64,000 bases of DNA from IMGVR_UViG_3300042465_005589:248001-312000; one strand, 5' to 3'. Shown: positions 37,068 to 64,000, numbered from the stretch's first letter. Numbers and translations are program-made. The notes: a model not told the origin generated them from the letters alone.

Positions 37068-37161
37068 TAGTTTGTCTTTTTTATTTGTAAATTTATTTTT
37101 ATTGATAAATATTATAAAAAAAACCAAAATACTTTACTTCATAAGAAGTATTTATAAATTA

Positions 37162-49705: not shown

Positions 49706-50479
49706 TTATCCGGCGATATTCCATGGTTTAGTTCCATTAAGTTTCTCTTCATAATTTGAAATAAAAATTTCATTTATTTTTGAAGATAACGGACTAACAC
49801 CATTACATGTTATCCCACTATTATAACTGGCAATTGACATAGACGAGCCTTCACCGGAACCAATTGTTTCTAAATAGTTGTGACGAATATCAAACTCTTC
49901 AGTAAACACAGATAGGTCATCCCATATTTTAAAAAAATTTTCTTCAGTTCCTCTGTCTTTTTTAATAATCCATTTACCTTCCAAATAGTGTTCTATATAA
50001 TCTTCAGGATGACCTTCATGAAACACTTTTTTTAATTTAAAACCATTTTTTTCCGCAAAATCAATACCTTCTTGACCATATTTAGTATTTCTTCTACCTT
50101 GTACTTCACAAGTACTAACATCGTCTGAACAATATGTGAACCCTATATTACCAAACGTTGCAAAAATATGTAGACCAGAGTTTATATCTGATAAAAAATC
50201 AATGTTATCAGTATCTTTAATAAAGACATCAGCATCTAAAAAAACTGCAGTGTCATAGTATTTTAAACATTCTTTCATCACCACTTTTTTTTCATGAAAT
50301 GAAAAATATGGTTTAGTATATTCTATTACTGTTAACAAATTATTTGGTGTATAATGTTCCGGAGAATTAGTCATTACAAAAATATGATGTCCCATATCAT
50401 TTATTTGTTTAATTAATGAATCTCCAAATGTTACATATTTTTCACCATATGTTAATGTACAAAACGCAAAATTACTCAT
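49706..50479 (-). CDS. GT-A fold glycosyltransferase
   Basis: GEKY, VMTN, VFLDADV (DxD); probable start MSNFAF by ATGA overlap. Confidence 0.65.
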   Translation of the reverse strand: MSNFAFCTLTYGEKYVTFGDSLIKQINDMGHHIFVMTNSPEHYTPNNLLTVIEYTKPYFSFHEKKVVMKECLKYYDTAVFLDADVFIKDTDNIDFLSDINSGLHIFATFGNIGFTYCSDDVSTCEVQGRRNTKYGQEGIDFAEKNGFKLKKVFHEGHPEDYIEHYLEGKWIIKKDRGTEENFFKIWDDLSVFTEEFDIRHNYLETIGSGEGSSMSIASYNSGITCNGVSPLSSKINEIFISNYEEKLNGTKPWNIAG

Positions 50480-52206
50480 ATTTCCTCTATTAATGTCCAA
50501 TCTTTATCCCCATACCAATCATAAGTGTGGTAAATTTTAATTTTATCTTTTTTATCAAAAAATAACTCATTTGTTTTTTCACTATTAAAGTGATATACAA
50601 CATCATTAATTTTAAACTCATGGTCTAAAAACTCAACATTATTTTTTAAATTCCAATTAAAATTTAAAACAAATAGATTATCATTTAATTCAAAAATTGA
50701 ATAACTTAAATCTATCTTGTGTTCTTTAAATTGAATGTCTGATACCTTTTTTGAAATTAGTTTACCCTCACTTAATTGTACTGTTTTTCTATCAGGAAAA
50801 TTTTTAATATAATCACTAATAAACCCACCATAAAAGTTATATTTAATATCTTCACCAAGTTTATTAGATATGTTGTGTGAATTAATTTTAAGTCCGCTTT
50901 TAGCTACACATAAACCAACAATATTACCCTCACCAACACCTATTTTATCCACCCCATTAATCATTTCATGAGCATCTAAAGATGATGATAATTCTTTCCA
51001 TGTATCTAAAAAAACTTTCCATTTATTTTCTTCTTTTGAAACAATTAAAACACCTTCTTGATAGTGATAAGCATCATTTATTGGGATATTTAATTTTTCG
51101 GATATACTTAACGCTAATTCACCATAACCCACAACCCTATTAGTAATGTCTTTACTTTCAAAAAAACCTCCGGAAGGTCTTGATATTAATCCCCAATCCC
51201 AAGATGGGTGAAATCCTGGTTTAATTATTCTAATTAAATTGGTGTAACAATTTTTATAATTTTTAAAAAATAATCTACAATCAGAATCAACATATACAAC
51301 AGCATCTTCATATTTAAATCCCTCTTCAAAACAAATTAATTTATCATTATATGAGAATTTTTTATTAGGATAATCTACTAATATAACATTATCTAAAGAA
51401 TCATAGAATTCTTTTTGGTCTGTAACTATTAATATTTTTTGTTTAAAATAATTTAAATCAAAAGCCAATTTAACCGCGTTTTTATTAGCTGTTTCACCAT
51501 GAGCAATAGTTGTAAAAATATAGTTTTGTTTTTTATAGTTTTTTTTACAACTATTATTTCCTTGTATATCTGTTGTAAAATCATTTTTAACTTTTACAAT
51601 TCTTTCATTTGAAACATACACATTGAATTCAGATAATCTAATATATAATGCGGTATCAATTTGATTATCTATATTAGTAAGTTTTTCGATTAATTTTTTT
51701 GCACCATTTGGGGATATTATTAAAGATGGTAAACACGTTACAATACCTTTAGGTATAGATAAGTTTTTACTAAATGGATGTTTTTCTACATCAGTATCAC
51801 CATGACCTAAATAACAATAATCAAAATCATTAGGTAATTCAGATAAAATCATCTTTAATTTATCATCAAATGAATTATCAATTTCCACATCATCTTCAAA
51901 AGTTATTGCAGGAGAATCTAATTCTGATATTTTTTGAAATAAATTAAGATAACTCATTAAAACCCCCAAACCACCTTGAGTCATTGATAATCCCCAAGCG
52001 GTTACTGTATCCATTAAAATATCTTGGATTGCATTTTCACTTAATATACCTTCTTTTAAAGTTCTTGGATTTATAGTAGACCCATCAACTGCGTCAAACC
52101 TTTGATAAATATTTTTTAAAATAGTACTTTTATTTAATTGATTTTCTATAAATAACTTCCTATCCGTTCTTTTTTCTAAATTAATATAAAAACAATGTTT
52201 TAGCAT
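50476..52206 (-). CDS. Bifunctional glycosyltransferase: GT25 + GT-A domain + C-terminal YHTYxWYG domain
   Basis: YINLEKRTDRK, RFDAVDG, FEDD, GAKKL, QID (GT25); second domain VYVDSD. Confidence 0.8.
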   Translation of the reverse strand: MLKHCFYINLEKRTDRKLFIENQLNKSTILKNIYQRFDAVDGSTINPRTLKEGILSENAIQDILMDTVTAWGLSMTQGGLGVLMSYLNLFQKISELDSPAITFEDDVEIDNSFDDKLKMILSELPNDFDYCYLGHGDTDVEKHPFSKNLSIPKGIVTCLPSLIISPNGAKKLIEKLTNIDNQIDTALYIRLSEFNVYVSNERIVKVKNDFTTDIQGNNSCKKNYKKQNYIFTTIAHGETANKNAVKLAFDLNYFKQKILIVTDQKEFYDSLDNVILVDYPNKKFSYNDKLICFEEGFKYEDAVVYVDSDCRLFFKNYKNCYTNLIRIIKPGFHPSWDWGLISRPSGGFFESKDITNRVVGYGELALSISEKLNIPINDAYHYQEGVLIVSKEENKWKVFLDTWKELSSSLDAHEMINGVDKIGVGEGNIVGLCVAKSGLKINSHNISNKLGEDIKYNFYGGFISDYIKNFPDRKTVQLSEGKLISKKVSDIQFKEHKIDLSYSIFELNDNLFVLNFNWNLKNNVEFLDHEFKINDVVYHFNSEKTNELFFDKKDKIKIYHTYDWYGDKDWTLIEEI

Positions 52207-52212
52207 ACTTTA

Positions 52213-53460
52213 TTATAAATTACCGGTTATTCTATCACGCCAACCTTTTGACGTACTATATGGCCATACAACCCAATATTTTGGTTTTGATGTTGTTTGG
52301 AAATCTCTCCAAACTTTACAATATCCGTCATGGTCTTTCATCATAGCATTTATCTCATTAATATCGGCATCTTTTCTATAAAGAGTTTCATCATTTTCAT
52401 TATGAAATGCTACAACCCAAAATTCATAATCTTTTTCCGGTACTTGTTTAAATGAGATATCGATACAATGTTTGAAAATACTCGCAAAACTTGATAACCA
52501 TTCTTCTTCCGTCTCATATATGGTAGGGTTTGGTGCGTATTTTTTATCTAAAGTATATTGTTGGACAGCTCTATTTGAAAATTTAAGACCTGAATAAATT
52601 TCATAATCTTTTAATGTTCTTTCAGTTCCAAATCCATACTTACTAAAATCCATAGTAACTTCTTCACCGTCCATTCCAAAAAGCTGTCTATTCTTTTTGT
52701 GAGATAACTCATTCTTTTTACCCCACTCTTTATCATCATCCCATTGTTTGGTTCTACCCTTACGAGTATATTCGTGCCAAATAACGGTCTTATGTGGGTG
52801 GAATAAATCATATCCGTGAGTGAATGCTCTAACAGCAATTGATATTTCTTCCCCGTGAAAATAAAATTCAGGGTCGTGTTGAACCTCCACACTAAATTGA
52901 CCTAATGTGAATGCCATGTGAGCAGAATAAAAACGAGAAGTGATTGGTTGTTTTAATTTTTCCCAACCAGGTATTGTTTCAGGTAAGAAGAATACCGCAC
53001 CTTCAGGAATGAATCTATCAAAAGACATTCTCCACGGCTCTTTAACTCTACCTGCCGGGTCATTCTCGGGGTCAAATGATGAAACATACCCCGTTAACAA
53101 AGGTTTCTTAAATCCTTTCTTTTGAAGTTGTTTAATCATTTTGATTAAGGTAGTATCCCAATCTTTTTCAAATCTCATATGAGAATCTATTTGAAGTGTA
53201 TACTCCTCACCATCATATAATTGTTGTACTTGATTTCTTGCCCAACAAACACCTTTAGCGTCGGAATACAAAACATCCTTAACTCTAAATCGTTTATCTT
53301 TTTTAAATTTTTCTAAATTATCAAACCCATCTTCAGGGTGATATTGACGACATATACCTATTCTTAAGTTTTTAGGTCTTTTAGCATTTTCAATCATGCT
53401 ATCAAGTGTCGGGATAAGCTGGGGGTCACGATAGGAGGCTATCTGTACAAATATTTTCAT
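52213..53460 (-). CDS. GT60-like polypeptide alpha-GlcNAc transferase (Gnt1/OGNT family)
   Basis: IFVQIASYRD, GVCWAR, LQIDSHMRFEKDWD, FHGEE..IAVRAFTHGYD, WHEY, YGFGTERTL..Y. Confidence 0.85.
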   Translation of the reverse strand: MKIFVQIASYRDPQLIPTLDSMIENAKRPKNLRIGICRQYHPEDGFDNLEKFKKDKRFRVKDVLYSDAKGVCWARNQVQQLYDGEEYTLQIDSHMRFEKDWDTTLIKMIKQLQKKGFKKPLLTGYVSSFDPENDPAGRVKEPWRMSFDRFIPEGAVFFLPETIPGWEKLKQPITSRFYSAHMAFTLGQFSVEVQHDPEFYFHGEEISIAVRAFTHGYDLFHPHKTVIWHEYTRKGRTKQWDDDKEWGKKNELSHKKNRQLFGMDGEEVTMDFSKYGFGTERTLKDYEIYSGLKFSNRAVQQYTLDKKYAPNPTIYETEEEWLSSFASIFKHCIDISFKQVPEKDYEFWVVAFHNENDETLYRKDADINEINAMMKDHDGYCKVWRDFQTTSKPKYWVVWPYSTSKGWRDRITGNL

Positions 53461-53599
53461 TTATCTCTTGTTTTACACAAAAGATAATAATCTATAATCA
53501 AATATAAATAATATTATTTTAATAATTTATTAAGGGGATGAAACAAAAGTTGATGGATTTATTAACCTAATTTTAAGATTATAAGTTTATTGATTTTAG

Positions 53600-55528
53600 T
53601 TAGTTTATAAAAGAAAGAAATTTTTTATTACTACTACTGTAAAGTACCCAAGAAGCACCATAGTTAGAAGATATTTGAGTTTGAAACGCAATTGTAGTTC
53701 CAAGCATATATTGTCCAGAATTAGATATATCTGTTTTGATAATAGAACTACCAAAAGTATTCGTAGTCCAACTAACACCAAAATTATTTGTGGTAATAAC
53801 TCTATTATTAGTAGCACCTACTATTCCATATCTTCCATCATAACTTAACTTAAGGTCTTCATTAAAATCTTGACTAACAATACTCATTATTGACCAAGTT
53901 GCACCAAAATCAGTACTTCTGTAACTATTTCCAACTGCTGAAACTAACATCATATATAATCCATTTCCTGATACTGCAACACCTTGAAAATTACTAGAAT
54001 TTGCGGCTGATTGCGAAGGAAAAATATTTAATGTTATATTTGTAAAAGTTATTCCATAATTTGTAGATAGTAAAACATATTTTAATGAACTTGAATCATA
54101 ACCTGCAATAATAACATATTGACCATCCCACGATACACTAGATTGGATAATTAATGTAAAAGCCACAGGAAATGATGCAGGACTCCAACTTGTTCCAAAA
54201 TCACCACTTCTTAAAAGAGTGCCTCCTGATTCAACATACATATATTGTCCATTTTTAGATATTGAAGTCTCCCCAATAAAACCAGAACCCACCCCAATAG
54301 GTGTTGAGTAAGAATTACCATAATCTGAAGATATCTTTACTTGTAAAGGAGAAGTTGCTCCTGCAGCCGCTATAGAGTATTGGTAATTATCGGAAGCATT
54401 TATTCCATAATTTGTAGTGACGCCAACAGACGTTAGTTGACTTATTTCAACAAGTGTATCATCATATATTCTAAAAAATGGAGATGAATTAGATGTACCT
54501 AACATATCCCCTACTCCAAAAACAGGTGTAGGTATTGATGTTGGAGTAGGTGTTGGAGTCGCAGTTGAGGTTGGTGTTGCCGTTGGTGTAGGTGTAGATG
54601 TCGGAGTAGATGTCGGAGTTGATGTTGGCGTCGCAGTCGGTGTTGGTGTGGATGTCGGAGTAGATGTTGGTGTTGATGTTGGTGTTGCCGTTGGAGTTGA
54701 TGTTGGAGTCGCAGTTGGTGTAGGTGTAGGTGTTGGAGTCGCAGTTGGTGTTGCCGTTGGTGTAGGTGTTGGTGTAGGTGTAGGACAAGGATTTAAAATT
54801 TGACAAGTATTAATATCCGGTTGACTATTTAATAAAATGTATGAATACTGATTCGTTGAGGTTATTGGTGATATTGATGTTACACAACCAACATATCCAC
54901 TACTTTGAACATAATAAACCCCTGACAATGGAGAATAAGATGTAGGAATATTATAAACTATAAAAGTGTTTGATGGGTTACAACTATCTTGGAAATACCC
55001 CACAATAGGTGCTAATGTTTGTGTTGGAGTAGTTGTTGGTGTTGCAGTAGGTACTGGTGCACAAGTATTATCAACACACACCTCATTAATCAGAATGTTT
55101 ACCCCCACATCAGCAGAAGGTAATCTACCGCAATAATATAAGGTAGTCCCTGATTGAATAACACTGTTTAACACAACGTTATTACATTGGGTTAAACTAA
55201 AGTTTAAAGTTCCCGAAGTTGTATTTTCAAATGATATACAATTACAAACAACAACCATTGTTGGAGTCGGAGTTGGTGTTGTTGTTGGAGTTGGTGTTGG
55301 TGGTAATGGACAACTTTCTAATAAAAATTCTTCACACCCTATTGAATCAGTCACAACAACTAAAACCTGACTAGCACCTTCTAATTGAGAAGGGATTGGA
55401 AGTTCTAATGTTGGAGGAACAGAAACAACACCGGTTGCAACCACATAACAATACGTTAATGTTAAATCACATATTGATATATCAAATGGTGAGTGTCCGT
55501 TTAAACTGGTTATTTCTATTACTTGCAT
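53600..55528 (-). CDS. Mucin-like Pro-Thr repeat protein with Cys-rich modules and C-terminal Asp-box (BNR) beta-propeller; putative fibre/adhesin
   Basis: Three PT tracts and six SxDxGxxW-type boxes. Probable start MQVIEITS at 55528 after TATTTAT. Confidence 0.75.
54525..54785 (-). repeat. Coding low-complexity repeat (TPT[P/A/S])n, about 85 aa
   Basis: Degenerate 12-nt units such as gttggtgtaggt and gtcggagtagat. Confidence 0.9.
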
Positions 55529-55632
55529 TACAATAAATATAGTTAGAATTATTTTACCATAAATACTTAACAATATTAAAGTTTACTATGGAACTTTATT
55601 AGTAATTTATTATTTTTATAATAAAAAAAAAT

Positions 55633-58600
55633 ATGTCGTTAAAGATTAACCATTACGATTTTATTGAAATTGGTACGTCAGATTTTGATACTTTAATTGA
55701 AACCTCCAATGACAATACTGTCGGTATTAGTATTGAACCTATAAAATATTACATAAATAGATTACCTGATAAACAGAATATTATTAAAGTCCAAGCGGCA
55801 TTATCAACAACAGATGGTGAAGTCGATGTGTACTATATTGAAGATTCTAAAATAGAAGAGAATAACTTACCTTGGTGGGTTAGAGGAAGTAACTCAATAA
55901 ATAATCCTCACCCTTTTGCTATTAAAGAATTAGGTGAAGAATTATACAATAGTTTGGTAACTATTGAAAAAGTTCCAACAATTAGTTGGGAAACATTAAT
56001 TAAAAGATATGATGTTGGTTCAATCGGTTATCTAAAGATTGATACTGAAGGTCACGACCATATCATCTTCAGAGATTTTTTAAACTATTGTAAAGAACAT
56101 TCATTTCCAATCCCAAACAAAATAACACTAGAATATCACGATGGTGTGTCAAACAAAGTTGAGATTGATAAATTAATATCGGAATTACCTGAATATCAAA
56201 TTATCAAACACATTAGTGATATTACATTAATGAAACCTCTAATACCGAGAGTAATACATCAAACATATAAAACTAATGATTTACCAACAGAAATAAGTGA
56301 GGTAGTTCAAAGGTTAAAAGATATGAATCCAACTTTTGAGTATAAATTCTACAACGATAACGATTGTGTTGAATTTATTAAAGAAAATTATGATGAAGAA
56401 ACTCTTAATCTTTATTTAAGTATTAACCCAAATTATGGGTCGGCTAAATCTGATTTTTTTAGATACCTTTTAATGTATAAAGTTGGTGGTGTTTATTTGG
56501 ATATTAAAAGTTGTACTACTAAACCTTTGGAAGAAGTTTTATTACCAACCGATGAATATCTATTAACTCATTGGGAAGGATTGGATTGGGCAGATGAATT
56601 AAAATATTATTTTGGCGAATTTCAAAATTGGCATATTATCTGTAAACCAAATCACCCATTTTTAAAAAGGGTAATTGAAATTGTTAAAGACAATATTAAA
56701 AATTATATTGGTGGGTCGGATAAATATTCTGTGTTAAGATTGACAGGTCCAATCGCTTATAGTAAAGGAATTATTGAACTTATATCTCAACATAAGAAAA
56801 ATAGTGTTGATTCACCCGTTAGAGAATTTTTATTAGAAAACGAGATTGGGTTACAATATATGTCAACCACAATACATCATCATAATCTAATTGATAGTTC
56901 GTATTCAAAAAGAGAACCTTTAATTTTAAAAGATAAGGTTGAGAAATCATATCTATTATATGCAACCGAAAACTATTTGGATGTTGCAAAGATGTGTATT
57001 AAATCAATCCGAGAATATAGTGATTTACCAATTTTCTTATATCTTATTAATTCTAATAAAGTTGTGGATATTAAAGATGTTGCAACCATAAATTGGAATG
57101 TAGAATTAGTTGATGATAATTCTGATAGATACATTCAAGAGGGTGACAATTTTTACATTAATAGAACCAATAAAACGATTTATAACATCTTAATACAAAA
57201 ACCATTAATCACTAAAGACGTTTTATCTAAATACACTAAAACGGTTGCATTTATTGATTGTGATTCAATTGCAACACCATATGTTGATAGAATCTTTGAC
57301 TTATACGATAATGATAAAGATTACCCTTATTTTGTTGAAGGGATTTATGATTTTCTACACGTAGGTGAACGAGGTGGTGCTATGACTAGAGATGATATGT
57401 CAACCACGTTGGAACATCCGGCGTGTGAATTATTTAATGTTAATCAGTATGTTAGAGAAAAATACCGACAAACAGGTTATTATGTTGCAAATGAAAAATG
57501 TATTGATTTTTTATACGAATGGTATCAAATGTGTTCTCACCCTGAAGTATTAAATAATATACCATATTATGCGGCATATAATGAGGAGACCATCCTAAAT
57601 GTGTTATTGTGGAAAAAATTAATATTTGATGGATTACCTTACATTTACGCTAACGGAAATTTAGAATTGATTGATAATATCTATTCAAACTACAATATTA
57701 GTGAAGAAAGTTTATGGATTAAGATTCCAAATAAGAAAGATGATTTGTTATTTATTCACGGAGAAAAGAACATTTTAGAAATGGGTAAAATAATATCAAA
57801 AATTAAAAACCATAATAAAGAAAAAATTAAAGTATTATTCTTGGCACCACATCTGTCAACCGGAGGGATGCCATCATTCCTATTAAAACGAATCGAATCG
57901 TTATTAGAATATTATAAAGATAAAACGGAATTATTTGTTGTGGAATATTCTAACCATAGTGACCACTATGTGGTTCAAAAAAATAGAATTAAAAAATTAA
58001 TACCTCCATCACATTTTTGGACGTTAGGTGAAGATAAAAACGAATTAAAGAAAATTATTGAGGAAAATTATTTTGACATAATTCACTTGGATGAAATGAT
58101 TGAAGATTTTGATGCTCATAATAAATTATCAAATGAGTTAATGAATTTCATTTATAAAAATGACCGAACTTGGAGAGTAGTGGAAACTTGTCATAACGTT
58201 GTATTCCAACCGGAAAAAGATAAAGTGTTTCATCCTGAAGCATACGCTTATTGTTCACCATTTCATAAAGAATCAACATTCTTGAATATGCCATCGTATG
58301 GTGAAGTAATTGAATTTCCGTATAACCCTACAATTGTAATAGATAAAGAAAGTAATAAAGAAAAATTAGGTTTAGACCCAAATAAAATTCACATTATAAA
58401 TGTTGGATTATGGACACCAGGTAAAAATCAAGAAGAAGGTGTTGAGATTGCAAAATTAGTTGAGGGTATTCACCCTGAATTAGAATTCCATTTCATTGGG
58501 AATCAAGCACCTAACTTTCAAGATTATTGGATACCAATTATGAAAGATTTACCATCAAACGTTAAAGTATGGGGGGAGAAAGATAATGTTAGTGATTTTA

Positions 58601-59976
58601 TGTGTGCCGCTGATGTATTGATGTTTAACTCAACTTGGGAATGTAATCCGTTAGTATTAAGAGAAGGTATTTCTTATGGATTAAAAATTTTAGCAAGAAA
58701 CTTACCTCAATATATGGATATGTTTACACCTTATATAACACAATTGTCAGGTGATATTTTTGACATGAAAAATCAACTTTTAGATTTAATTAAAGATGAA
58801 AGTTATTACGAATTCCCAACATATAGAACAAAAGAATTTGCTGAAAAAAATTACGAGTTATACCAAAAAATATTAAACGAACCAATTAAAAAACAAACCA
58901 TGATAGATAATGAAGTACAAATATTCCAACATTTTGTTAAAGAACCATTTTTAGAAATAAAAGGAACTGGAGACAAAGATTACAATGTTAAATTCTTTGA
59001 TGAAGAAGGTATTTGTCATTATGAGAATACCATAAAACCAAATCATTGGGTTAAATTAAATAGAAGTTATTACACCAAATGGAGAGCAGTTGTTACTCGA
59101 GATAATGAGGTAATTTATGATAACACTATGGATTTAACAAATAAAAGAGTTTACATATCTTTCGATAGTAAATCTTTAGGTGACTCGATTGCTTGGATTC
59201 CTTATGTTTTAGAATTTAAAAAGAAACACGATTGTAAAGTTATTGTATCTACATTTTGGAATCATTTATTTGAAAATGAATATCCTGAAATTGAGTTTGT
59301 TGTACCGGGAACGACCGTACATAATCTTTATGCTATGTACACAATCGGATGGTTCTACAATACAGATAAAGAACCTGTATTACCAAACACAATACCATTA
59401 CAACAAACAATTACTAACATATTAGGATTAGAATTTAAAGAGATTAAACCTAATATACACAACACCATTCACCCAAGACCTTATCAAAAGAAATATGTTA
59501 CCATAGCAACTAACTCAACAGCAGGGTGTAAATTTTGGACAAGAGAAGGATGGCAATCACTAATTAACTATCTTCATAATTTAGGATATAAAGTAATAAA
59601 CGTATCCAAAGAAGATAATCCGTTTGAAAATGCAAACAAGATTAAAAACACCTCAATTCATCACACAATGAATGTAATTCACCATAGCGAATTCTTTATC
59701 GGATTATCTAGTGGTTTATCTTGGTTAGCTTGGGCGTTAGGTAAACAAGTTGTAATGATTTCTAACTTTACAAATGAGGAACATGAGTTTATGTTTAATT
59801 GTACTAGAATTGTAAATCATTCTGTTTGTAACGGATGTTGGAATAAACCTGAATTTACCTTTGATAAAGGTGATTGGAATTGGTGTCCTGTTAATAAAGG
59901 AACTGAAAAACAATTTGAATGTCATAAATCGATAACACCGGAAATGGTTATTAATCAAATACAACATTTACTATAA
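55633..59976 (+). CDS. Five-domain enzyme: FkbM methyltransferase + GT32 + GT-A + GT4 + AAH/TibC-like heptosyltransferase
   Basis: FIEIG/LKIDTEGHD; IPRVIHQT/SDFFRY/GGVYLDIK/LTGP; FIDCD; HLSTGG/KNQ/ECNPLVLREG; SLGDSIAW/FIGLSSGLSWLAWA/CNGCW..C..C. Confidence 0.85.
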   Translation: MSLKINHYDFIEIGTSDFDTLIETSNDNTVGISIEPIKYYINRLPDKQNIIKVQAALSTTDGEVDVYYIEDSKIEENNLPWWVRGSNSINNPHPFAIKELGEELYNSLVTIEKVPTISWETLIKRYDVGSIGYLKIDTEGHDHIIFRDFLNYCKEHSFPIPNKITLEYHDGVSNKVEIDKLISELPEYQIIKHISDITLMKPLIPRVIHQTYKTNDLPTEISEVVQRLKDMNPTFEYKFYNDNDCVEFIKENYDEETLNLYLSINPNYGSAKSDFFRYLLMYKVGGVYLDIKSCTTKPLEEVLLPTDEYLLTHWEGLDWADELKYYFGEFQNWHIICKPNHPFLKRVIEIVKDNIKNYIGGSDKYSVLRLTGPIAYSKGIIELISQHKKNSVDSPVREFLLENEIGLQYMSTTIHHHNLIDSSYSKREPLILKDKVEKSYLLYATENYLDVAKMCIKSIREYSDLPIFLYLINSNKVVDIKDVATINWNVELVDDNSDRYIQEGDNFYINRTNKTIYNILIQKPLITKDVLSKYTKTVAFIDCDSIATPYVDRIFDLYDNDKDYPYFVEGIYDFLHVGERGGAMTRDDMSTTLEHPACELFNVNQYVREKYRQTGYYVANEKCIDFLYEWYQMCSHPEVLNNIPYYAAYNEETILNVLLWKKLIFDGLPYIYANGNLELIDNIYSNYNISEESLWIKIPNKKDDLLFIHGEKNILEMGKIISKIKNHNKEKIKVLFLAPHLSTGGMPSFLLKRIESLLEYYKDKTELFVVEYSNHSDHYVVQKNRIKKLIPPSHFWTLGEDKNELKKIIEENYFDIIHLDEMIEDFDAHNKLSNELMNFIYKNDRTWRVVETCHNVVFQPEKDKVFHPEAYAYCSPFHKESTFLNMPSYGEVIEFPYNPTIVIDKESNKEKLGLDPNKIHIINVGLWTPGKNQEEGVEIAKLVEGIHPELEFHFIGNQAPNFQDYWIPIMKDLPSNVKVWGEKDNVSDFMCAADVLMFNSTWECNPLVLREGISYGLKILARNLPQYMDMFTPYITQLSGDIFDMKNQLLDLIKDESYYEFPTYRTKEFAEKNYELYQKILNEPIKKQTMIDNEVQIFQHFVKEPFLEIKGTGDKDYNVKFFDEEGICHYENTIKPNHWVKLNRSYYTKWRAVVTRDNEVIYDNTMDLTNKRVYISFDSKSLGDSIAWIPYVLEFKKKHDCKVIVSTFWNHLFENEYPEIEFVVPGTTVHNLYAMYTIGWFYNTDKEPVLPNTIPLQQTITNILGLEFKEIKPNIHNTIHPRPYQKKYVTIATNSTAGCKFWTREGWQSLINYLHNLGYKVINVSKEDNPFENANKIKNTSIHHTMNVIHHSEFFIGLSSGLSWLAWALGKQVVMISNFTNEEHEFMFNCTRIVNHSVCNGCWNKPEFTFDKGDWNWCPVNKGTEKQFECHKSITPEMVINQIQHLL

Positions 59977-60653
59977 TGGATTATAATAATTTTGATTGGG
60001 GATGGATGGGACAAAGTGAAGAAGGTTTGTTTCATAAAGAACAAATAACTCAAGAAACATTTGTTGATAAAATATATGAAAAGTTTTTTGAAGTTTCTGA
60101 AGGTGATATTGTTTTAGATTTTGGTGCTAGTGTTGGACCATTTACGTATAGTATTTTATCAAAAAAACCAAAACACGTATATTGTCTTGAACCAAGTGAA
60201 TTTGAATTTCCCACATTAGTTAATAATACAGTTGGTCATCCGGTAACACCAATATTGAAGGGTGTCTCAAATACCAACACATATACTGAGGGTAATGACA
60301 TTTATGGTGGTTCAAAACAAATGGAAGGAATTACTTTTAAAAAACTTTGTGAGTTATATAATTTAAAAACCATAGATTTTTTAAAAACAGATTGTGAGGG
60401 TGGTGAATACGATATTTTTAATGATGAGAATTTTGAATTTATTAAAAATAATGTCAAAAAAATCACCGGTGAGTGGCATTTAGGTACACCAATTTTAAAA
60501 GAAAAATTTAAAAAATTCAGAGATACTTACTTACAATACTTTATAAATGTTGAGGTGTACTCAATAGATGGTGTTAATGTAAAATGGAATTTAATGTCTG
60601 ACAATTTTTTAGAACACTATACAGAAATAATAATACACATATATAACGTTTAA
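59976..60653 (+). CDS. FkbM-family methyltransferase
   Basis: VLDFGASVG, CLEP, IDFLKTDCEGGEY, GEWH. Confidence 0.88.
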   Translation: MDYNNFDWGWMGQSEEGLFHKEQITQETFVDKIYEKFFEVSEGDIVLDFGASVGPFTYSILSKKPKHVYCLEPSEFEFPTLVNNTVGHPVTPILKGVSNTNTYTEGNDIYGGSKQMEGITFKKLCELYNLKTIDFLKTDCEGGEYDIFNDENFEFIKNNVKKITGEWHLGTPILKEKFKKFRDTYLQYFINVEVYSIDGVNVKWNLMSDNFLEHYTEIIIHIYNV

Positions 60654-60657
60654 TTAA

Positions 60658-61476
60658 ATGAAACAAATATTTTTTAACTCTTCCCTACCTAGAAGTGGAA
60701 GTACATTAATTCAGAATTTATTAGCTCAAAATCCTGAAATTTACTCAACACCAACATCAGGGTTGGTAGATTTTGTAATCGCTTGTAAAAACAATTACAA
60801 TCACTCACAAGCATTCCAAGCTCAAAATCAAGATGAAATGACCAAAGCCTTTGTCGATTTTTGTCAAGATGGTATGCAAGGTTATTTTAAAAGACTTACT
60901 GATAAACCAATCGTAATCGATAAAAGTCGAGAATGGGGAATCAATTATGGTTTATTGGAAATGCTACAACCAAACCCAAAAATTATTTGTATGGTTAGAG
61001 ATGTTAGAGCTGTCTATAGTTCAATGGAAAAGAATTTTAGAAAAAACCCTCATAGAGAAAATGGGATTCAAAGACCGGCAGAATTAATTGGGACAACCTT
61101 AAACAAACGTGTTGATATTTGGGCTAGTGGTGTTCCTGTTGGTGTTGCAATTGATAGGTTATTAGATACCATTCAACAAGGTATTGCCGAAAAAATGTTA
61201 TTTATTCGTTACGAGGATTTAATGAGTAATCCTGAAGAAGAAATGAGTAGAATATACAATTATTTAGAACTACCATATTATGAAGGACATGACTTTGAGA
61301 ATATATCTCAACTAACTCATGAAGATGATAGAGTACATGGGATATTTGGTGACCACCAATTAAGACCTAAATTTGAAAGAAAACCGGATGATTACATGGA
61401 AGTGTTGGGGTATGAGATATCAATGAACATTAAAAATCATTATAAATGGTTTTATGACTATTTTGGATACGTATAA
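60658..61476 (+). CDS. PAPS-dependent sulfotransferase
   Basis: 5'-PSB SLPRSGSTL, DKS, 3'-PB MVRDVRAVYSS, RYEDL. Confidence 0.9.
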   Translation: MKQIFFNSSLPRSGSTLIQNLLAQNPEIYSTPTSGLVDFVIACKNNYNHSQAFQAQNQDEMTKAFVDFCQDGMQGYFKRLTDKPIVIDKSREWGINYGLLEMLQPNPKIICMVRDVRAVYSSMEKNFRKNPHRENGIQRPAELIGTTLNKRVDIWASGVPVGVAIDRLLDTIQQGIAEKMLFIRYEDLMSNPEEEMSRIYNYLELPYYEGHDFENISQLTHEDDRVHGIFGDHQLRPKFERKPDDYMEVLGYEISMNIKNHYKWFYDYFGYV

Positions 61477-61488
61477 AAAATTTTAATT

Positions 61489-61941
61489 ATGGCAATATAT
61501 TGGTTTACAGGTCAGCCCGGAGCAGGTAAGACCACATTAGCAAAACAACTTAAAGATTATCTACACCCAAGTAATGTAATGCTTGTTGATGGAGATGACA
61601 TTAGAGATGTGTTTCAGAATAAAGATTACTCTGAAAATGGCAGAAGAAAAAATATTGAGAAAGCACAAGACATCTCATTATTTTTAGATTCAAAAGGATT
61701 TGATGTAATAGTTTCATTAGTATCTCCTTATAAAGACCAACGTGATGAATTTAAAAACAAACATAATGTTTTAGAGTTTTACATTCACACCGAAGATATT
61801 AGAGGAAGAGAAGATTATCACGTATCTAACTATGAACCACCAACTGAAAATTTTGTGGATGTGGATACAACAAATGTTATTGAACAAATCTCTATAGGAA
61901 TAATTATAAATAAAATTAATGAATATAAATTAAATGGATAA
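61489..61941 (+). CDS. cysC: Adenylylsulfate (APS) kinase
   Basis: WFTGQPGAGKTT, VDGDDIR, YSENGRRKN, VSLVSPY, YEPP. Confidence 0.9.
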   Translation: MAIYWFTGQPGAGKTTLAKQLKDYLHPSNVMLVDGDDIRDVFQNKDYSENGRRKNIEKAQDISLFLDSKGFDVIVSLVSPYKDQRDEFKNKHNVLEFYIHTEDIRGREDYHVSNYEPPTENFVDVDTTNVIEQISIGIIINKINEYKLNG

Positions 61942-62344
61942 TTGGGAAAGAAAAACACACGTACAAGCAGCATTCGCTTCATCATCGTCAAATAAAAAAT
62001 ATTCAATGTTTGTAGGTAGATGGCAACCGTGGCATCATGGTCATAGAGCATTAATTGACCAACAATTGAATAGAGATAAAAATATCCTACTATGTGTTAG
62101 AGATGTTGAAATTGATGATAAAAATCCGTTTTCAACAGAATGGGTTATTGAAAACTTAAACAAAGAATTAAAAGACCTAATTGATGAAGGAAGATTAGTG
62201 ATTCAGGTTATTCCGGATATAGAAAGTGTTAATATTGGTAGAGGTGTTGGATATGATGTTTATGAACATTTCCCTCCTGAGGATATTAAAAACATTTCTG
62301 CAACAAAAATTAGAGAACAAATGAAAAAAGACGGTAAACTATAA
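61934..62344 (+). CDS. Small HIGH-family nucleotidyltransferase (candidate minimal ATP sulfurylase)
   Basis: GRWQPWHHGH and ISATKIRE; coupled to cysC. Confidence 0.75.
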   Translation: MDNWERKTHVQAAFASSSSNKKYSMFVGRWQPWHHGHRALIDQQLNRDKNILLCVRDVEIDDKNPFSTEWVIENLNKELKDLIDEGRLVIQVIPDIESVNIGRGVGYDVYEHFPPEDIKNISATKIREQMKKDGKL

Positions 62345-62611: not shown

Positions 62612-63310
62612 ATGGAAAATAATATTTGTGTTTATTTACATAAAAAACCTAATGGTGATATATTTTATGTGGGAATTGGGACTAATAAAAGACCTTATGA
62701 AAAATTTAGAAAAAATGTATATTGGAAAAATATAACAAATAAATACCCTAATTATATTATTGAAATAATTGAAGAAAATTTAACTTGGGAAGATGCCTGT
62801 ATTATTGAAAAACAATTAATTAGAAAATACGGTAGAAAATGTGATGGTGGTATATTATGTAATATAACTTTAGGTGGTGATGGGGTTTATGGTTTAAAAC
62901 ATTCTCAAGAAACTAAAGAAAAATTAAAAAAATTATCAACCGGAAATAAAAATTGTGTTGGATTTAAACATACTGAAATAACTAAAGTAAATATGAGTAA
63001 ATCTCATTTAGGTAAAATAACACCAAAAGAAGTTAGAGAAAAAATGTCAAAAACTCATTTAGGTAGACCAGGTAGAGAATCAGATAAATTAAATGTTAAA
63101 AAGGCACATATTAAAAATATAGGTAGAGTTCAAAATGAGGATGAAAAAGAAAAAAGAGCCAAAAAATTATGTAAACCAATTGAGGTTAATGGTGTAATAT
63201 ATGAATCAATAAAACAATATTCTGAAATAACTAATATTAACCGAAGTAAAGTTTGGCGAAATTTAAAAGACGAAAAAAATAAAAACTACAAATACATAAA
63301 TAAAAAATGA
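62612..63310 (+). mobile_element. GIY-YIG homing endonuclease with NUMOD3 repeats
   Basis: CVYLH...FYVGIG..R..E..N; repeated KHSQETKEKL / KHTEITKVNMS / EVREKMSK. Confidence 0.88.
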
Positions 63311-64000
63311 ATGTAATATTTTCTATAGAAGGTGGATTAGGAAAATCCATAATGGGTACGGCAGTATTAAAAGCAATAAAAAAACAATATAGTAAAGCTA
63401 ACATAATTGTTGTTAGTAGTTATCCGGATGTCTTTATTGGTAATCCAAACGTTAATAAAGTTTTGACTCACGAAACAATGAGTGGGATATATGAAAAATA
63501 TATCATGGGTAAAGAAGCAAAAGTATTTGTTTCTGACCCATACTCAACTTCAGATTATATTACCGAAGAAAAACATCTAATTCAGTTATGGTGTGAAATG
63601 TATGGTCTAAATTACAATGGTGAAAAACCTGAATTATTTATAAGTAAAGCCGAAAAACAATACTTTGAAGGGTTCTATAAGTTAGATAAACCAATTATGG
63701 TTATTCAACCTCATGGGGGTGCATTTAACCAACCGTTAAAATATAGTTGGACAAGAGATATACCTCAACCAATTATGCAAGACATTATAAATCATTTTGC
63801 AAATGATTACGCTATCTTACACGTTAAACGAGAAGACCAAATTATTTACGAAAATACGTTCCAAGCATTAGATTCATTTAGAAGTATTGCTGTATTATTG
63901 AGTATGGCAACAAAACGATTATTAATCGATAGTAGTGTTATGCACATTGCGACGGCATTAAATTTACCATCAGTGGTGACTTGGGTTGGGACAAATCCGG
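63307..64000 (+). CDS. GT9 (heptosyltransferase-like) glycosyltransferase, truncated at the window edge
   Basis: Not in the track. MNVIFSIEGGLGKSIMGTAVLKAIKKQY..YPDVFIGNPNV...IDSSVMHIATALNLPSVVTWVGTNP. Confidence 0.85.
   Translation, partial: MNVIFSIEGGLGKSIMGTAVLKAIKKQYSKANIIVVSSYPDVFIGNPNVNKVLTHETMSGIYEKYIMGKEAKVFVSDPYSTSDYITEEKHLIQLWCEMYGLNYNGEKPELFISKAEKQYFEGFYKLDKPIMVIQPHGGAFNQPLKYSWTRDIPQPIMQDIINHFANDYAILHVKREDQIIYENTFQALDSFRSIAVLLSMATKRLLIDSSVMHIATALNLPSVVTWVGTNP

What the first reader, a model, noticed from the sequence alone, without database searches (positions are those of the whole stretch)
55633..59976. Five-enzyme glycan assembly line in one polypeptide
Approximate order: FkbM (55633-56230), GT32 (56240-56925), GT-A (56940-57820), GT4 (57830-58890), AAH/TibC-like (58915-59973). 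The last domain keeps a CxxC..C..C set like the iron-binding motif of dodecameric autotransporter heptosyltransferases. Read from C to N terminus it suggests initiate, extend three times, then methyl-cap (inference).
Basis: partly seen in the sequence, partly recalled or inferred. Interest (0 to 1): 0.75.

Follow-up and report, generated by a model that had tools for sequence, protein, structure and literature searches.

The report
Phage five-domain fibre-glycan assembly enzyme
A 318-kb lake-water jumbo phage encodes one 1447-residue soluble protein that joins a methyltransferase to four glycosyltransferases, ends in a relative of the bacterial adhesin-glycosylating enzyme TibC, and sits next to serine/threonine-rich phage fibre genes that it most likely coats with sugars.

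Summary
Window 55633-59976(+) is one intact 1447-aa ORF with five domains at almost exactly the stated coordinates:
- FkbM methyltransferase
- GT32-like GT-A
- a Pfam-less GT-A domain, shown here by modelling to be GT8/GT6-like
- GT4
- an Aah/TibC-type domain (TIGR04414, 283 bits, cut-off 200)

The four iron-finger cysteines, the catalytic Asp and three of the four donor-binding residues of TibC are kept. Two features of the bacterial family are lost across the whole phage clade: the adenine-reading Arg286 (now Thr) and the hydrophobic beta-hairpin thumb needed for the dodecamer ring. I would therefore claim neither "heptosyl" nor "dodecameric".

The window belongs to a lake-water jumbo phage. 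More than 1500 homologues and 380 viral contigs carry the same invariant GT4-TibC-like C-terminal pair. The modules in front of it are shuffled (FkbM, GT32, GT25, GT2, pyruvyl transferase, other methyltransferases), and sequence identity steps sharply at domain borders.

The gene lies in a glycan island that also has GT25, a GT60-type polypeptide GlcNAc transferase, a second FkbM, and a sulfotransferase with APS-kinase-like and nucleotidyltransferase-fold genes. It is flanked by Ser/Thr-rich proteins: a mucin-like (T/S-P)n protein and a 1876-aa collagen-like/beta-solenoid fibre.

Best reading: a lipid-carrier-independent O-glycan assembly line for phage fibres. The acceptor, the donors and the order of steps are inferred, not shown.

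The parts
55633..59976 (+). Whole ORF, 1447 aa (P0001). Soluble: no hydrophobic segment (maximum Kyte-Doolittle 19-residue mean 1.1).
55633..56232 (+). Domain 1, FkbM-family SAM methyltransferase (aa 1-200). The conserved FIEiGTS, siEP and KiDTEG motifs are present.
   Evidence: PF05050 E 2e-8 to 7e-10; conservation in 92 homologues
56233..56922 (+). Domain 2, GT32-like GT-A (aa 201-430). The IHQT and DfFRY..GGVYLD-I-K-S motifs are conserved. The second Asp of the canonical DXD is a conserved Lys (D290, K292).
   Evidence: PF04488 E 1e-10, PF05704 E 4.5e-5, Och1 9n3s E 1.5e-4
56923..57828 (+). Domain 3, a Pfam-less GT-A domain of GT8/GT6-like (retaining-type) fold (aa 431-732). Invariant D542-x-D544, E651-E-T..N and H709-G-E-K.
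   Evidence: only 419 50%-identity clusters in 1.84 billion representatives
57829..58902 (+). Domain 4, GT4 (GT-B) glycosyltransferase (aa 733-1090). Has the N-terminal PHLSTGG, GKNQ and an E-x7-E motif (E1003..E1011).
   Evidence: PF00534 E 5e-10, PF13692; WaaG 2iv7 and 2jjm weak hits
58903..59973 (+). Domain 5, Aah/TibC-type (BAHT, GT9-related) protein O-glycosyltransferase domain (aa 1091-1447). D1184 = TibC Asp110; T1296/K1300 = Thr226/Lys230; W1364 = Trp305; T1345 replaces Arg286; S1359 replaces Pro300; the thumb region is 10 residues shorter.
   Evidence: TIGR04414 282.6 bits; phmmer to 4rb4/4rap E 1e-50 with alignment; residue roles from PMC4358343
59827..59925 (+). Iron-finger-type cysteine cluster C1399-x2-C1402 ... 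C1418 ... C1430. All four are at least 95% conserved in 107 homologues.
59976..60653 (+). Stand-alone second FkbM methyltransferase, 225 aa. Its start overlaps the stop of the big ORF. Present next to the big ORF in 31 of 80 related loci.
60658..61476 (+). Sulfotransferase, 272 aa (PF13469 E 1.5e-22; weak likeness to NoeE).
61489..62344 (+). APS-kinase-like ORF (150 aa) and an overlapping nucleotidyltransferase-fold ORF (136 aa). Together a putative phage PAPS supply. The two are fused in phrog_10255.
63307..64000 (+). Small GT9-like glycosyltransferase, 291 aa in full. It runs 182 nt past the window end and is followed, convergently, by the 1876-aa fibre gene (L083:2217-7847:-).
53600..55573 (-). 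Candidate acceptor 1: a 657-aa protein, 29% Ser+Thr, with three (T/S-P)n mucin-like linkers (the longest about 80 residues) and a C-terminal BNR/Asp-box repeat domain. It is transcribed divergently from the big ORF.
52213..53460 (-). PF11397 (GT60-type polypeptide GlcNAc transferase family) protein, 415 aa.
   Evidence: PF11397 E 9e-72; phrog_24687 E 1.5e-168
50476..52206 (-). 576-aa protein with an N-terminal GT25 domain.
   Evidence: PF01755 E 4e-17

Best explanation
The ORF is a soluble, cytoplasmic, multi-enzyme protein of a freshwater jumbo phage. I propose that it builds a short O-linked glycan directly on phage structural proteins, without a lipid carrier.

Proposed mechanism (inferred):
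1. The C-terminal Aah/TibC-type domain puts the first sugar on Ser (or Thr) of the Ser/Thr-rich fibre proteins encoded beside it. These are the 1876-aa collagen-like/15-residue beta-solenoid fibre and possibly the mucin-like (T/S-P)n protein.
2. The GT4 domain, the GT8/GT6-like domain and the GT32-like domain extend the chain. All three belong to retaining-type families.
3. The FkbM domain methylates a sugar, and the stand-alone FkbM encoded just downstream may add a second methyl.
4. The neighbouring sulfotransferase, with its own PAPS genes, and the GT25, GT60-type and small GT9 genes add further decoration.

Sugar donors come from the host, because the phage encodes no nucleotide-sugar pathway. 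The donor of the first step need not be ADP-heptose.

Recombination at domain borders swaps modules between phages and so diversifies the fibre glycan.

Shown: the domain identities, motif conservation, modular shuffling, synteny with Ser/Thr-rich fibre genes and viral distribution. Inferred: the acceptor, the donors, the order of steps and the biological role (cloaking or tuning of fibres).
For: Domain calls.

Catalytic-type motifs are kept at 95% or more in 45-110 homologues for every domain.

The TibC-type domain scores 282.6 bits on the Aah/TibC equivalog model but only 25.8 bits on LPS heptosyltransferase I. It keeps the catalytic Asp, Thr226/Lys230, Trp305 and the four Cys (roles from PMC4358343).

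There is no TM segment.

The genome is a 318,164-bp virus record, and the gene is intact in at least 19 lake-water runs.

Distribution: 1552 homologues and 380 IMG/VR contigs, against 6 MAG contigs among 185,579 species genomes.

Synteny:
- 62 of 80 related loci have at least one Ser/Thr-rich ORF of 200 aa or more in the flank.
- That is 137 of 603 ORFs, against 3 of 160 in the rest of this genome (Fisher p 2e-12).
- With low-complexity filtering off, 39 loci have a neighbouring ORF matching the fibre's C-terminal segment at E <= 1e-10. About a dozen share the beta-solenoid repeats. Several of the weaker matches run through collagen-like G-S/T-S repeats.

The fibre has collagen repeats (Pfam E 2e-33; tail-fibre PHROGs). 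It also has about 60 fifteen-residue xSTIGGGxxNxASxx rungs that model as a beta-solenoid with pLDDT about 90. TibC modifies Ser in ..NSGGA.. / ..TSAA.. turns of a beta-helix, and BAHT genes sit next to their acceptor genes (PMC4358343).

A GT60-type polypeptide GlcNAc transferase lies next to the mucin-like protein.

Module swapping is seen as sharp identity steps at domain borders. In relatives the same pathway genes occur as separate ORFs.

Precedent: PBCV-1 A064R (GT-GT-methyltransferase) with the stand-alone methyltransferase A061L acts on a viral capsid glycan (PMC9614988).
Against: - No direct evidence exists for any acceptor or donor.
- Arg286, which reads adenine N1 in TibC, is Thr in the whole clade. 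The thumb needed for the active TibC dodecamer is missing. The TibC F265D and V266D mutants were inactive, so the phage domain must work in another quaternary form or be impaired.
- The GT32 domain lacks a canonical DXD.
- GT8-, GT4-, GT9- and GT25-type enzymes are also the classical LPS-core toolkit. WaaO, RfaI and WaaG are among the structural or sequence hits, so a lipid-linked or envelope acceptor is not excluded.
- 18 of 80 loci showed no Ser/Thr-rich neighbour, although most of these have short flanks.
- The fibre model matched solved beta-helices only weakly (TM 0.17 or less).
- The complex prediction gave no verdict.
Confidence: 0.55

Rival explanations
1. Host-envelope remodelling. 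The enzyme builds or alters a lipid-linked or LPS/LOS-core-type oligosaccharide of the host during infection, for example to block superinfection or the loss of progeny on cell debris. The fibre synteny would then be incidental.
For: Domain 3 resembles the LPS-core GT8 enzymes LgtC, WaaO and RfaI/J. The GT4 domain weakly hits WaaG. GT9 and GT25 are LPS/LOS families. The changes at Arg286 and the thumb show that the C-terminal domain has diverged from protein-specific BAHTs.
Against: - The score on the Aah/TibC model is ten times that on the WaaC model.
- The TibC-specific iron finger, which contacts the TibA substrate in the bacterial enzyme, is strictly kept.
- There is no membrane-association segment.
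- The association with Ser/Thr-rich fibre genes across divergent phages is strong.
- The family is almost absent from bacterial genomes.
Confidence: 0.2
2. Protein glycosylation, but of other targets. The acceptor would be another virion protein (capsid, sheath, or the other Ser/Thr-rich fibre cluster at genome 219-240 kb) or a host protein, rather than the adjacent fibre or mucin-like proteins.
For: Mycobacteriophage glycans sit on capsid and tail-tube subunits (cited in PMC12619734). This genome has a second cluster of 21-25% Ser/Thr structural-size ORFs far from the island. 18 of 80 loci lack an adjacent Ser/Thr-rich ORF.
Against: The adjacency rule known for BAHTs and the enrichment statistics favour the neighbours. 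Nothing points to a specific alternative target.
Confidence: 0.15
3. Glycosylation of hypermodified phage DNA, or synthesis of a free or secreted polysaccharide.
For: Phage glycosyltransferases can hypermodify DNA (Pyle et al. 2024, cited in PMC12619734). The genome has a thymidylate-synthase-family ORF of 429 aa.
Against: That ORF is 175 kb away. No known DNA glycosyltransferase fold or family was hit. Methylation, sulfation and an Aah/TibC-type domain fit a protein or glycan acceptor rather than DNA.
Confidence: 0.04
4. One or more domains are catalytically dead scaffolds (GT32 with D-x-K; the TibC-like domain without thumb and Arg286), so the protein carries out fewer than five reactions.
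For: Non-canonical DXD and loss of two residues or elements whose mutation inactivates TibC.
Against: The substituted residues are themselves at least 95% conserved, and the surrounding motifs are under strong constraint. Both domains also recur as stand-alone or differently fused genes, which would be odd for dead scaffolds.
Confidence: 0.15

Closest known systems
TibC / Aah bacterial autotransporter heptosyltransferases (BAHT family, TIGR04414; PDB 4rap, 4rb4)
   Same: Clear homology (E 1e-50, 283 bits). The catalytic Asp110, Thr226, Lys230, Trp305 and all four Fe-coordinating Cys are kept. The enzyme is cytoplasmic and soluble, and its gene lies beside a gene for a Ser-rich beta-solenoid surface protein.
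   Different: It is the last domain of a 1447-aa phage protein, not a 400-aa stand-alone bacterial enzyme. Arg286 (adenine contact) is Thr. Pro300 is Ser, as in Aah. The beta-hairpin thumb region is 10 residues shorter and lacks the Phe-Val tip. There is no autotransporter, and the donor is unknown.
Chlorovirus PBCV-1 A064R (two rhamnosyltransferases plus a methyltransferase), its partner methyltransferase A061L, and A111/114R (three GT domains)
   Same: A virus-encoded, soluble, multi-domain enzyme that combines GTs and a methyltransferase and acts on the virus's own structural glycan. A second stand-alone methyltransferase lies nearby. Domain 3 here shares the GT-A fold of A064R-D1 (2p6w, Z 13.4).
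   Different: Those are eukaryotic giant viruses that make N-linked capsid glycans with three domains. This protein has five domains (up to about seven in relatives), a BAHT-type initiating domain and fibre-type candidate acceptors, and it is in a tailed phage. Apart from the shared GT-A fold of one domain, no sequence relationship to A064R was found.
Mycobacteriophage virion glycosylation (Freeman et al. 2023, as cited in PMC12619734)
   Same: Phage-encoded GTs that O-glycosylate virion proteins in the infected cytoplasm.
   Different: Those phages use single-domain GTs on the C-termini of capsid and tail-tube proteins. No BAHT-type domain, multi-domain fusion or sulfation genes are reported there.
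Microcystis phage Mel-JY01 CDS WWT39291.1 (1226 aa, annotated 'methyltransferase FkbM') and huge phages LR756501/3/4
   Same: The only INPHARED records with a homologous TibC-type domain (37-47% identity). Mel-JY01 also fuses it to a GT4 domain and lies beside a 'structural protein'. The catalytic SLGD motif and the cysteine motif are kept, and the thumb region is also short.
   Different: GT4 is N-terminal and the middle of the protein is unassigned. None of these proteins has been characterised.
LPS/LOS core glycosyltransferases (LgtC, WaaO/RfaI/RfaJ of GT8; WaaG of GT4; WaaC/F of GT9) and bifunctional WbbM
   Same: Folds and families of domains 3 to 5. WbbM is also a multi-domain GT with a GT8-like module (Z 15.4).
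   Different: Those act on lipid-anchored acceptors at the membrane, as separate proteins. Sequence identity here is 10-14%.
Glycosylated collagen-like surface fibres (Bacillus anthracis BclA exosporium nap; Mimivirus fibrils). From my own knowledge, not tested here.
   Same: Collagen-like G-x-T/S stalks carrying O-glycans with methylated sugars on the surface of a dormant or extracellular particle.
   Different: Different enzymes and organisms. This is an analogy only.

Membership tests
BAHT (Aah/TibC) protein O-heptosyltransferases | Scores above the curated cut-off of the equivalog model TIGR04414 | tested here: met
   282.6 bits against a cut-off of 200; 286 bits in the genome search
BAHT (Aah/TibC) protein O-heptosyltransferases | Catalytic base Asp110 and beta-phosphate/sugar ligands Thr226, Lys230, Trp305 | tested here: met
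   D1184, T1296, K1300, W1364 align; at least 95% conserved in 107 homologues
BAHT (Aah/TibC) protein O-heptosyltransferases | Arg286 contacting adenine N1 (basis of ADP-sugar specificity; R286A inactive) | tested here: not met
   Thr1345 at this column, conserved in the phage clade. The alignment confidence at this column is moderate.
BAHT (Aah/TibC) protein O-heptosyltransferases | Four-Cys 1Fe-0S iron finger | tested here: met
   C1399, C1402, C1418, C1430 align to Cys339/342/358/370. Iron binding itself is not testable here.
BAHT (Aah/TibC) protein O-heptosyltransferases | Beta-hairpin thumb with a hydrophobic Phe265-Val266 tip, required for the dodecamer | tested here: not met
   The segment between conserved anchors is 26 aa against 36 aa in TibC and has no Phe-Val pair. 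The length is the same across the clade. It is also short in Mel-JY01.
BAHT (Aah/TibC) protein O-heptosyltransferases | Dodecameric ring; ADP-heptose donor; Ser of a beta-helical passenger as acceptor | not testable with these tools
   No gmhA, NTP_transferase or epimerase gene in the phage. The complex prediction with a fibre segment gave no verdict.
BAHT (Aah/TibC) protein O-heptosyltransferases | Gene adjacent to its acceptor (an autotransporter) | tested here: inconclusive
   There is no autotransporter, but a Ser/Thr-rich beta-solenoid/collagen-like fibre gene lies within 5 kb. Ser/Thr-rich ORFs are 15-fold enriched next to homologues.
FkbM methyltransferases (PF05050) | Pfam gathering score and conserved SAM-binding and family motifs | tested here: met
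   34.8-39.8 bits against 22.7. Motifs conserved in 92 homologues. TIGR01444 is below its cut-off (17.6 against 37.7).
GT32 (PF04488 Gly_transf_sug) | Pfam gathering score | tested here: met
   42.3 bits against 23
GT32 (PF04488 Gly_transf_sug) | Canonical DXD metal-binding motif | tested here: not met
   D290-I-K292, with Lys at least 95% conserved in 45 homologues
GT8/GT6-type retaining GT-A enzymes (domain 3) | Sequence membership in a curated family | tested here: not met
   No Pfam hit at E <= 10. No PDB sequence hit.
GT8/GT6-type retaining GT-A enzymes (domain 3) | GT-A fold with DXD | tested here: met
   Model pLDDT 86.7. LgtC Z 16.4, BoGT6a 15.6, glycogenin 15.0. Invariant D542-x-D544.
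GT4 (PF00534) | Pfam gathering score and E-x7-E motif | tested here: met
   39.7 bits against 26.4. E1003-x7-E1011 invariant.
Multi-domain viral glycan-building enzymes (PBCV-1 A064R type) | Several GT domains plus a methyltransferase in one soluble virus-encoded polypeptide, acting on a virion glycan | tested here: inconclusive
   The architecture is met. Action on a virion glycan is inferred only. This is an analogous system rather than a homologous family.

The most novel reading that the evidence does not exclude
Abundant freshwater phages, both jumbo and about 100 kb, carry a recombination-shuffled, lipid-carrier-independent protein O-glycan assembly line. Its invariant C-terminal pair is a BAHT-derived initiating domain, no longer ADP-specific and no longer ring-forming, followed by a GT4 domain; this pair lays a conserved core on fibre Ser/Thr. 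Its interchangeable N-terminal modules (GT-A types, GT25, GT2, pyruvyl-, methyl- and, in trans, sulfo-transferases) write a variable, capped outer glycan. Module content would then predict glycan structure, and the glycan would cloak or tune the receptor-binding fibres.
Probability: 0.3. Interest if true: 0.85.

Novelty: new variant of a known kind. Interest (0 to 1): 0.72.

Why it matters
Virion glycosylation in tailed phages is known from very few cases, and multi-domain glycan-building enzymes are known mainly from giant algal viruses. Here a five-transferase polypeptide, with up to about seven modules in relatives, is common in lake phages, is soluble, and is built on a domain family known to glycosylate folded proteins in the bacterial cytoplasm.

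If it does decorate fibres:
- Many environmental phages would carry complex methylated and sulfated glycans on their host-recognition organelles. That bears on host range, decay, grazing and immune or lectin recognition.
- It would provide a natural library of swappable glycosyltransferase modules for cytoplasmic glycoengineering.
- It would provide a natural experiment on how a BAHT enzyme works without its dodecamer ring and adenine contact.

The Pfam-less GT-A domain (419 clusters at 50% identity) may also define a new glycosyltransferase family.

Tried and rejected
- Complex prediction of the TibC-type domain with 150 residues of the fibre solenoid scored 0.00 and gave no verdict. It is evidence neither for nor against binding.
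- The idea that the 15-residue repeats are YadA-head-like or TibA-like was not supported. The fibre model matched only phage tailspike beta-helices, weakly (TM 0.17 or less, E 8e-4 or worse). I describe it only as a beta-solenoid.
- Pfam on domain 3 alone at E 10 found nothing. A PDB sequence search of aa 1-1110 found only weak GT32 and GT4 hits.
- A DNA search of cultured and deposited phages found only a 9% match in huge-phage records.
- PHROGs gave nothing for the 2300-aa, 1671-aa and 1122-aa ORFs.
- The promoter/terminator scan was no better than shuffles (58 against 70 expected; 4 against 3.8) and so says nothing about operon structure.
- Searches of the phage genome for Epimerase (PF01370), NTP_transferase (PF00483) and GmhA were negative, so phage-made ADP-heptose or other NDP-sugars are not supported.
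- A search with the C-terminal domain alone returned only fragments and stand-alone members of the same phage clade. It did not reach bacterial BAHTs, so no phage-versus-bacteria tree was built.
- Literature searches found no description of this enzyme family. The 'moraphage' paper notes core glycosyltransferases in aquatic jumbo phages without detail. I did not test whether this genome belongs to that lineage.
- The host hint (MAG bins of Chitinophaga, Sediminibacterium and Bacteroidota) is weak, because these are short, probably mis-binned phage contigs.

Full report
**1. What is there**

Window 55633-59976(+) is one uninterrupted ORF of 1447 codons plus a stop. The window is bases 248001-312000 of a 318,164-bp IMG/VR virus record with about 31% G+C that is judged complete. 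Tail sheath, baseplate, DNA polymerase, helicase and ribonucleotide reductase genes in the same window show that it is a tailed jumbo phage. The gene is present, essentially identical, in at least 19 lake-water metagenome runs.

**2. The five domains**

Profile searches place four of the five domains:
- FkbM methyltransferase at aa 29-172.
- GT32-type sugar-binding region at aa 219-302.
- GT4 at aa 904-1058.
- An Aah/TibC "autotransporter strand-loop-strand O-heptosyltransferase" at aa 1115-1445, with 282.6 bits against a curated cut-off of 200. LPS heptosyltransferase I reaches only 25.8 bits.

The third stretch (aa 431-732) has no Pfam or PDB sequence match. I aligned 28 homologous segments (A1) and folded it, giving pLDDT 86.7 and pTM 0.87. 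Three searches agree that it is a GT-A fold of the retaining GT8/GT6 kind:
- Foldseek against the PDB.
- Foldseek against Swiss-Prot models.
- An exhaustive VIA-align search, where LgtC scores Z 16.4, BoGT6a 15.6, WbbM 15.4, glycogenin 15.0 and PBCV-1 A64R 13.4.

The domain has an invariant D-x-D (D542, D544). A profile search of 1.84 billion cluster representatives found only 419 related clusters. Some are stand-alone proteins of about 300 aa and many lie inside long multi-domain proteins.

**3. Are the domains catalytically plausible?**

I compared each domain with 45-110 homologues of 90% identity or less. The expected motifs are at least 95% conserved:
- FkbM: FIEiGTS, siEP and KiDTEG.
- GT32: IHQT and DfFRY..GGVYLD.
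- Domain 3: D-x-D-S, EET..N and HGEK.
- GT4: PHLSTGG, GKNQ and E-x7-E.
- TibC-type domain: SLGD, NST.GCK, GLSSGLSW and the four Cys.

Two departures stand out, and both are conserved in the clade.

First, the GT32 module reads D290-I-K292 where a DXD is expected.

Second, the last domain differs from TibC at two elements. The alignment to TibC and the residue roles from the TibC structure paper (PMC4358343) show the following:
- Asp110 (catalytic base), Thr226 and Lys230 (beta-phosphate ligands), Trp305 (heptose O4) and Cys339/342/358/370 (ferric ion) are all kept.
- Arg286, which hydrogen-bonds adenine N1 and explains ADP-sugar specificity, is Thr1345.
- Pro300 is Ser, as in Aah.
- The segment that forms the beta-hairpin thumb is 10 residues shorter and has no Phe-Val tip.

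In TibC, the F265D and V266D mutants give inactive dimers, and R286A is inactive or strongly diminished. The phage domain therefore cannot simply be assumed to be a dodecameric ADP-heptose enzyme.

The phage genome has no gmhA, NTP-transferase or epimerase/dehydratase genes, so donors must come from the host. Its cultured relative infects Microcystis. From my own knowledge, not tested here, cyanobacterial LPS generally lacks heptose. That also argues against heptose as an obligatory donor.

**4. Relatives and modularity**

A search of 5.8 billion proteins gave 1552 homologues. I mapped the five domains on the best 120:
- The GT4-TibC-type pair is present and C-terminal in every complete protein.
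- Domain 3 is nearly always present.
- The rest varies. FkbM occurs with or without GT32. A pyruvyl-transferase module (PF04230) can be inserted between domain 3 and GT4. GT25 (PF01755), GT2 (PF00535) or another methyltransferase (PF13489) can be added.
- One relative has a permuted order (P0029), and lengths range from 1023 to 1914 aa.

Sliding identity shows sharp steps at domain borders. For example, P0024 is about 55% identical through FkbM and domain 3 and then about 92-98% identical through GT4 and TibC. P0105 goes from about 28% to about 90% at the same border. This is the signature of recombinational module swapping.

In other relatives the accessory functions are separate genes at the same place: a small GT9, methyltransferase, GT2, DegT-type fragment, PglD-type acetyltransferase and GT34. 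Stand-alone or FkbM-only versions of the TibC-type domain also exist.

The family is viral:
- 380 IMG/VR contigs, several of 317-326 kb and many of 90-160 kb.
- Six short MAG contigs among 185,579 species genomes.
- In the deposited-phage collection, only three huge-phage records and Microcystis phage Mel-JY01. In Mel-JY01 a 1226-aa CDS annotated merely "methyltransferase FkbM" carries GT4 and the TibC-type domain.

**5. Context and the likely acceptor**

The ORF heads a tightly packed, partly overlapping run of same-strand genes: a second FkbM methyltransferase, a sulfotransferase, an APS-kinase-like ORF, a small nucleotidyltransferase-fold ORF, a homing endonuclease and a small GT9-like enzyme.

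Upstream and divergent lie three genes:
- A 657-aa protein with 29% Ser+Thr, long (T/S-P)n mucin-like linkers and a BNR-repeat domain.
- A PF11397 enzyme (E 9e-72). From my knowledge, the characterised members of that family put GlcNAc on Thr or hydroxyproline of polypeptides.
- A GT25-containing protein.

Immediately past the window end, convergent with the run of genes, is an 1876-aa protein with 30% Ser+Thr (L083:2217-7847:-). It has three notable parts:
- A (G-S/T-S/T)n collagen-like stalk (Pfam collagen E 2e-33; "collagen-like minor tail/tail fibre" PHROGs).
- About sixty 15-residue repeats of consensus xSTIGGGxxNxASxx, which AlphaFold2 models as a regular beta-solenoid with repeat pLDDT about 90.
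- A C-terminal globular end.

TibC modifies serines in ..NSGGA.. and ..TSAA.. turns of the TibA beta-helix, and BAHT genes typically sit beside their acceptor genes.

Across the 80 fetched viral loci, 62 have at least one Ser/Thr-rich ORF of 200 aa or more in the flank. That is 137 of 603 ORFs, against 3 of 160 elsewhere in this genome (Fisher p 2e-12). Collagen-like stalks occur in 43 loci. With low-complexity filtering off, 39 loci have a neighbouring ORF matching the fibre's C-terminal segment at E <= 1e-10. About a dozen share the beta-solenoid repeats, and several of the weaker matches run through collagen-like G-S/T-S repeats. The sulfation cassette recurs in roughly a quarter of loci.

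The protein has no hydrophobic segment. This fits cytoplasmic action on folding fibre subunits.

**6. Mechanism proposed, and what is inferred**

Shown:
- Five transferase-type domains with conserved catalytic motifs.
- A BAHT-derived C-terminal domain.
- Modular recombination.
- Viral distribution.
- Synteny with Ser/Thr-rich fibre genes and with methylation and sulfation genes.

Inferred:
- Domain 5 initiates on fibre Ser/Thr. GT9-related enzymes are inverting.
- GT4, domain 3 and GT32, all of retaining-type families, extend the chain.
- FkbM, the second FkbM and the sulfotransferase cap or decorate it.

Two observations are compatible with a conserved inner glycan and a variable outer glycan. 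The C-terminal pair is the most constant part in presence and position, and the N-terminal modules are the most exchangeable. The permuted and inserted architectures show that domain order need not equal reaction order.

**7. Rivals**

- An LPS-core-like or other lipid-linked acceptor is the main alternative, because GT8, GT4, GT9 and GT25 are the classical core toolkit. Against it stand the ten-fold better fit to the protein-specific BAHT model, the retained iron finger (which in TibC contacts the protein substrate), the lack of membrane segments and the fibre synteny.
- Other protein targets remain possible.
- DNA glycosylation, a free polymer and partial catalytic decay are possible but less likely.
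- The complex prediction gave no verdict and carries no weight either way.

**8. Comparison with the known, and novelty**

The enzyme works like a fusion of two known ideas. One is cytoplasmic hyperglycosylation of a beta-helical surface protein by TibC/Aah. The other is the multi-domain GT-GT-methyltransferase enzyme A064R of chlorovirus PBCV-1, which has a partner methyltransferase, A061L. [quoted passage not shown]

As a member of the BAHT family, the last domain passes the sequence, catalytic-residue and iron-finger tests. It fails two features that the structure paper calls highly conserved, the thumb and Arg286. I therefore file it as a divergent, phage-specific BAHT-derived subfamily, not as a heptosyltransferase.

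I found no paper describing these proteins. Public annotation calls them either "autotransporter strand-loop-strand O-heptosyltransferase" or "methyltransferase FkbM".

Verdict: a real feature and a new variant of known kinds. The strongest open question is the acceptor.

Noticed in passing
window 60658-62344 (+): A phage-encoded sulfation cassette: a sulfotransferase (PF13469 E 1.5e-22, weakly NoeE-like), a 150-aa APS-kinase-like ORF and an overlapping 136-aa nucleotidyltransferase-fold ORF that could be a minimal ATP sulfurylase. The last two are fused in phrog_10255. The cassette recurs beside the big enzyme in about 20-25 of 80 related loci.
   Followed up: partly
window 52213-55573 (-): A PF11397 (GT60-type polypeptide GlcNAc transferase family, E 9e-72) gene lies directly beside a 657-aa protein with roughly 80-residue (T/S-P)n mucin-like linkers and a BNR/Asp-box domain. 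This is a second possible enzyme-acceptor pair in the island.
   Followed up: partly
window 62612-63310 (+): A GIY-YIG/NUMOD3 homing endonuclease (phrog_314 E 4e-22) is inserted within the glycan operon, between the nucleotidyltransferase-like ORF and the small GT9 gene. It is absent at this spot in most relatives (3 of 80 loci).
   Followed up: no
L083:2217-7847 (-), which is genome 312217-317847, just past the window end: An 1876-aa fibre with a G-S/T-S/T collagen-like stalk of about 340 residues, then about 60 fifteen-residue xSTIGGGxxNxASxx rungs interrupted four times by a conserved Cys-rich insert (..NECCSLG..). It models as a beta-solenoid with no good match among solved structures.
   Followed up: partly
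window 16969-23871 (-) and 24190-29205 (-): Two very large ORFs (2300 and 1671 aa) next to the tail genes have no PHROG match at all.
   Followed up: no
window 33741-37127 (-): A tail sheath protein of 1128 aa. Only the last 290 or so residues match sheath families, so about 800 residues of N-terminal extension are unassigned.
   Followed up: no
L016:12847-15585 (+), a related 102-kb viral contig: A 912-aa ORF just downstream of the glycan genes combines AXH-module matches (PF08517, E 3e-35) with Hint/intein-splicing domains.
   Followed up: no
G000:C1:127222-128487 (-), outside the window: A 429-aa open frame of the thymidylate-synthase family (290 bits). It could be ThyA or a pyrimidine hydroxymethylase. 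This matters only for the DNA-modification rival.
   Followed up: no
L085-L090 (MAG contigs): The only six hits in 185,579 species genomes are short contigs binned as Chitinophaga, Sediminibacterium, Bacteroidetes, Bacteroides and Muiribacterium. They are probably phage contigs in bins and give a weak hint of Bacteroidota hosts.
   Followed up: no
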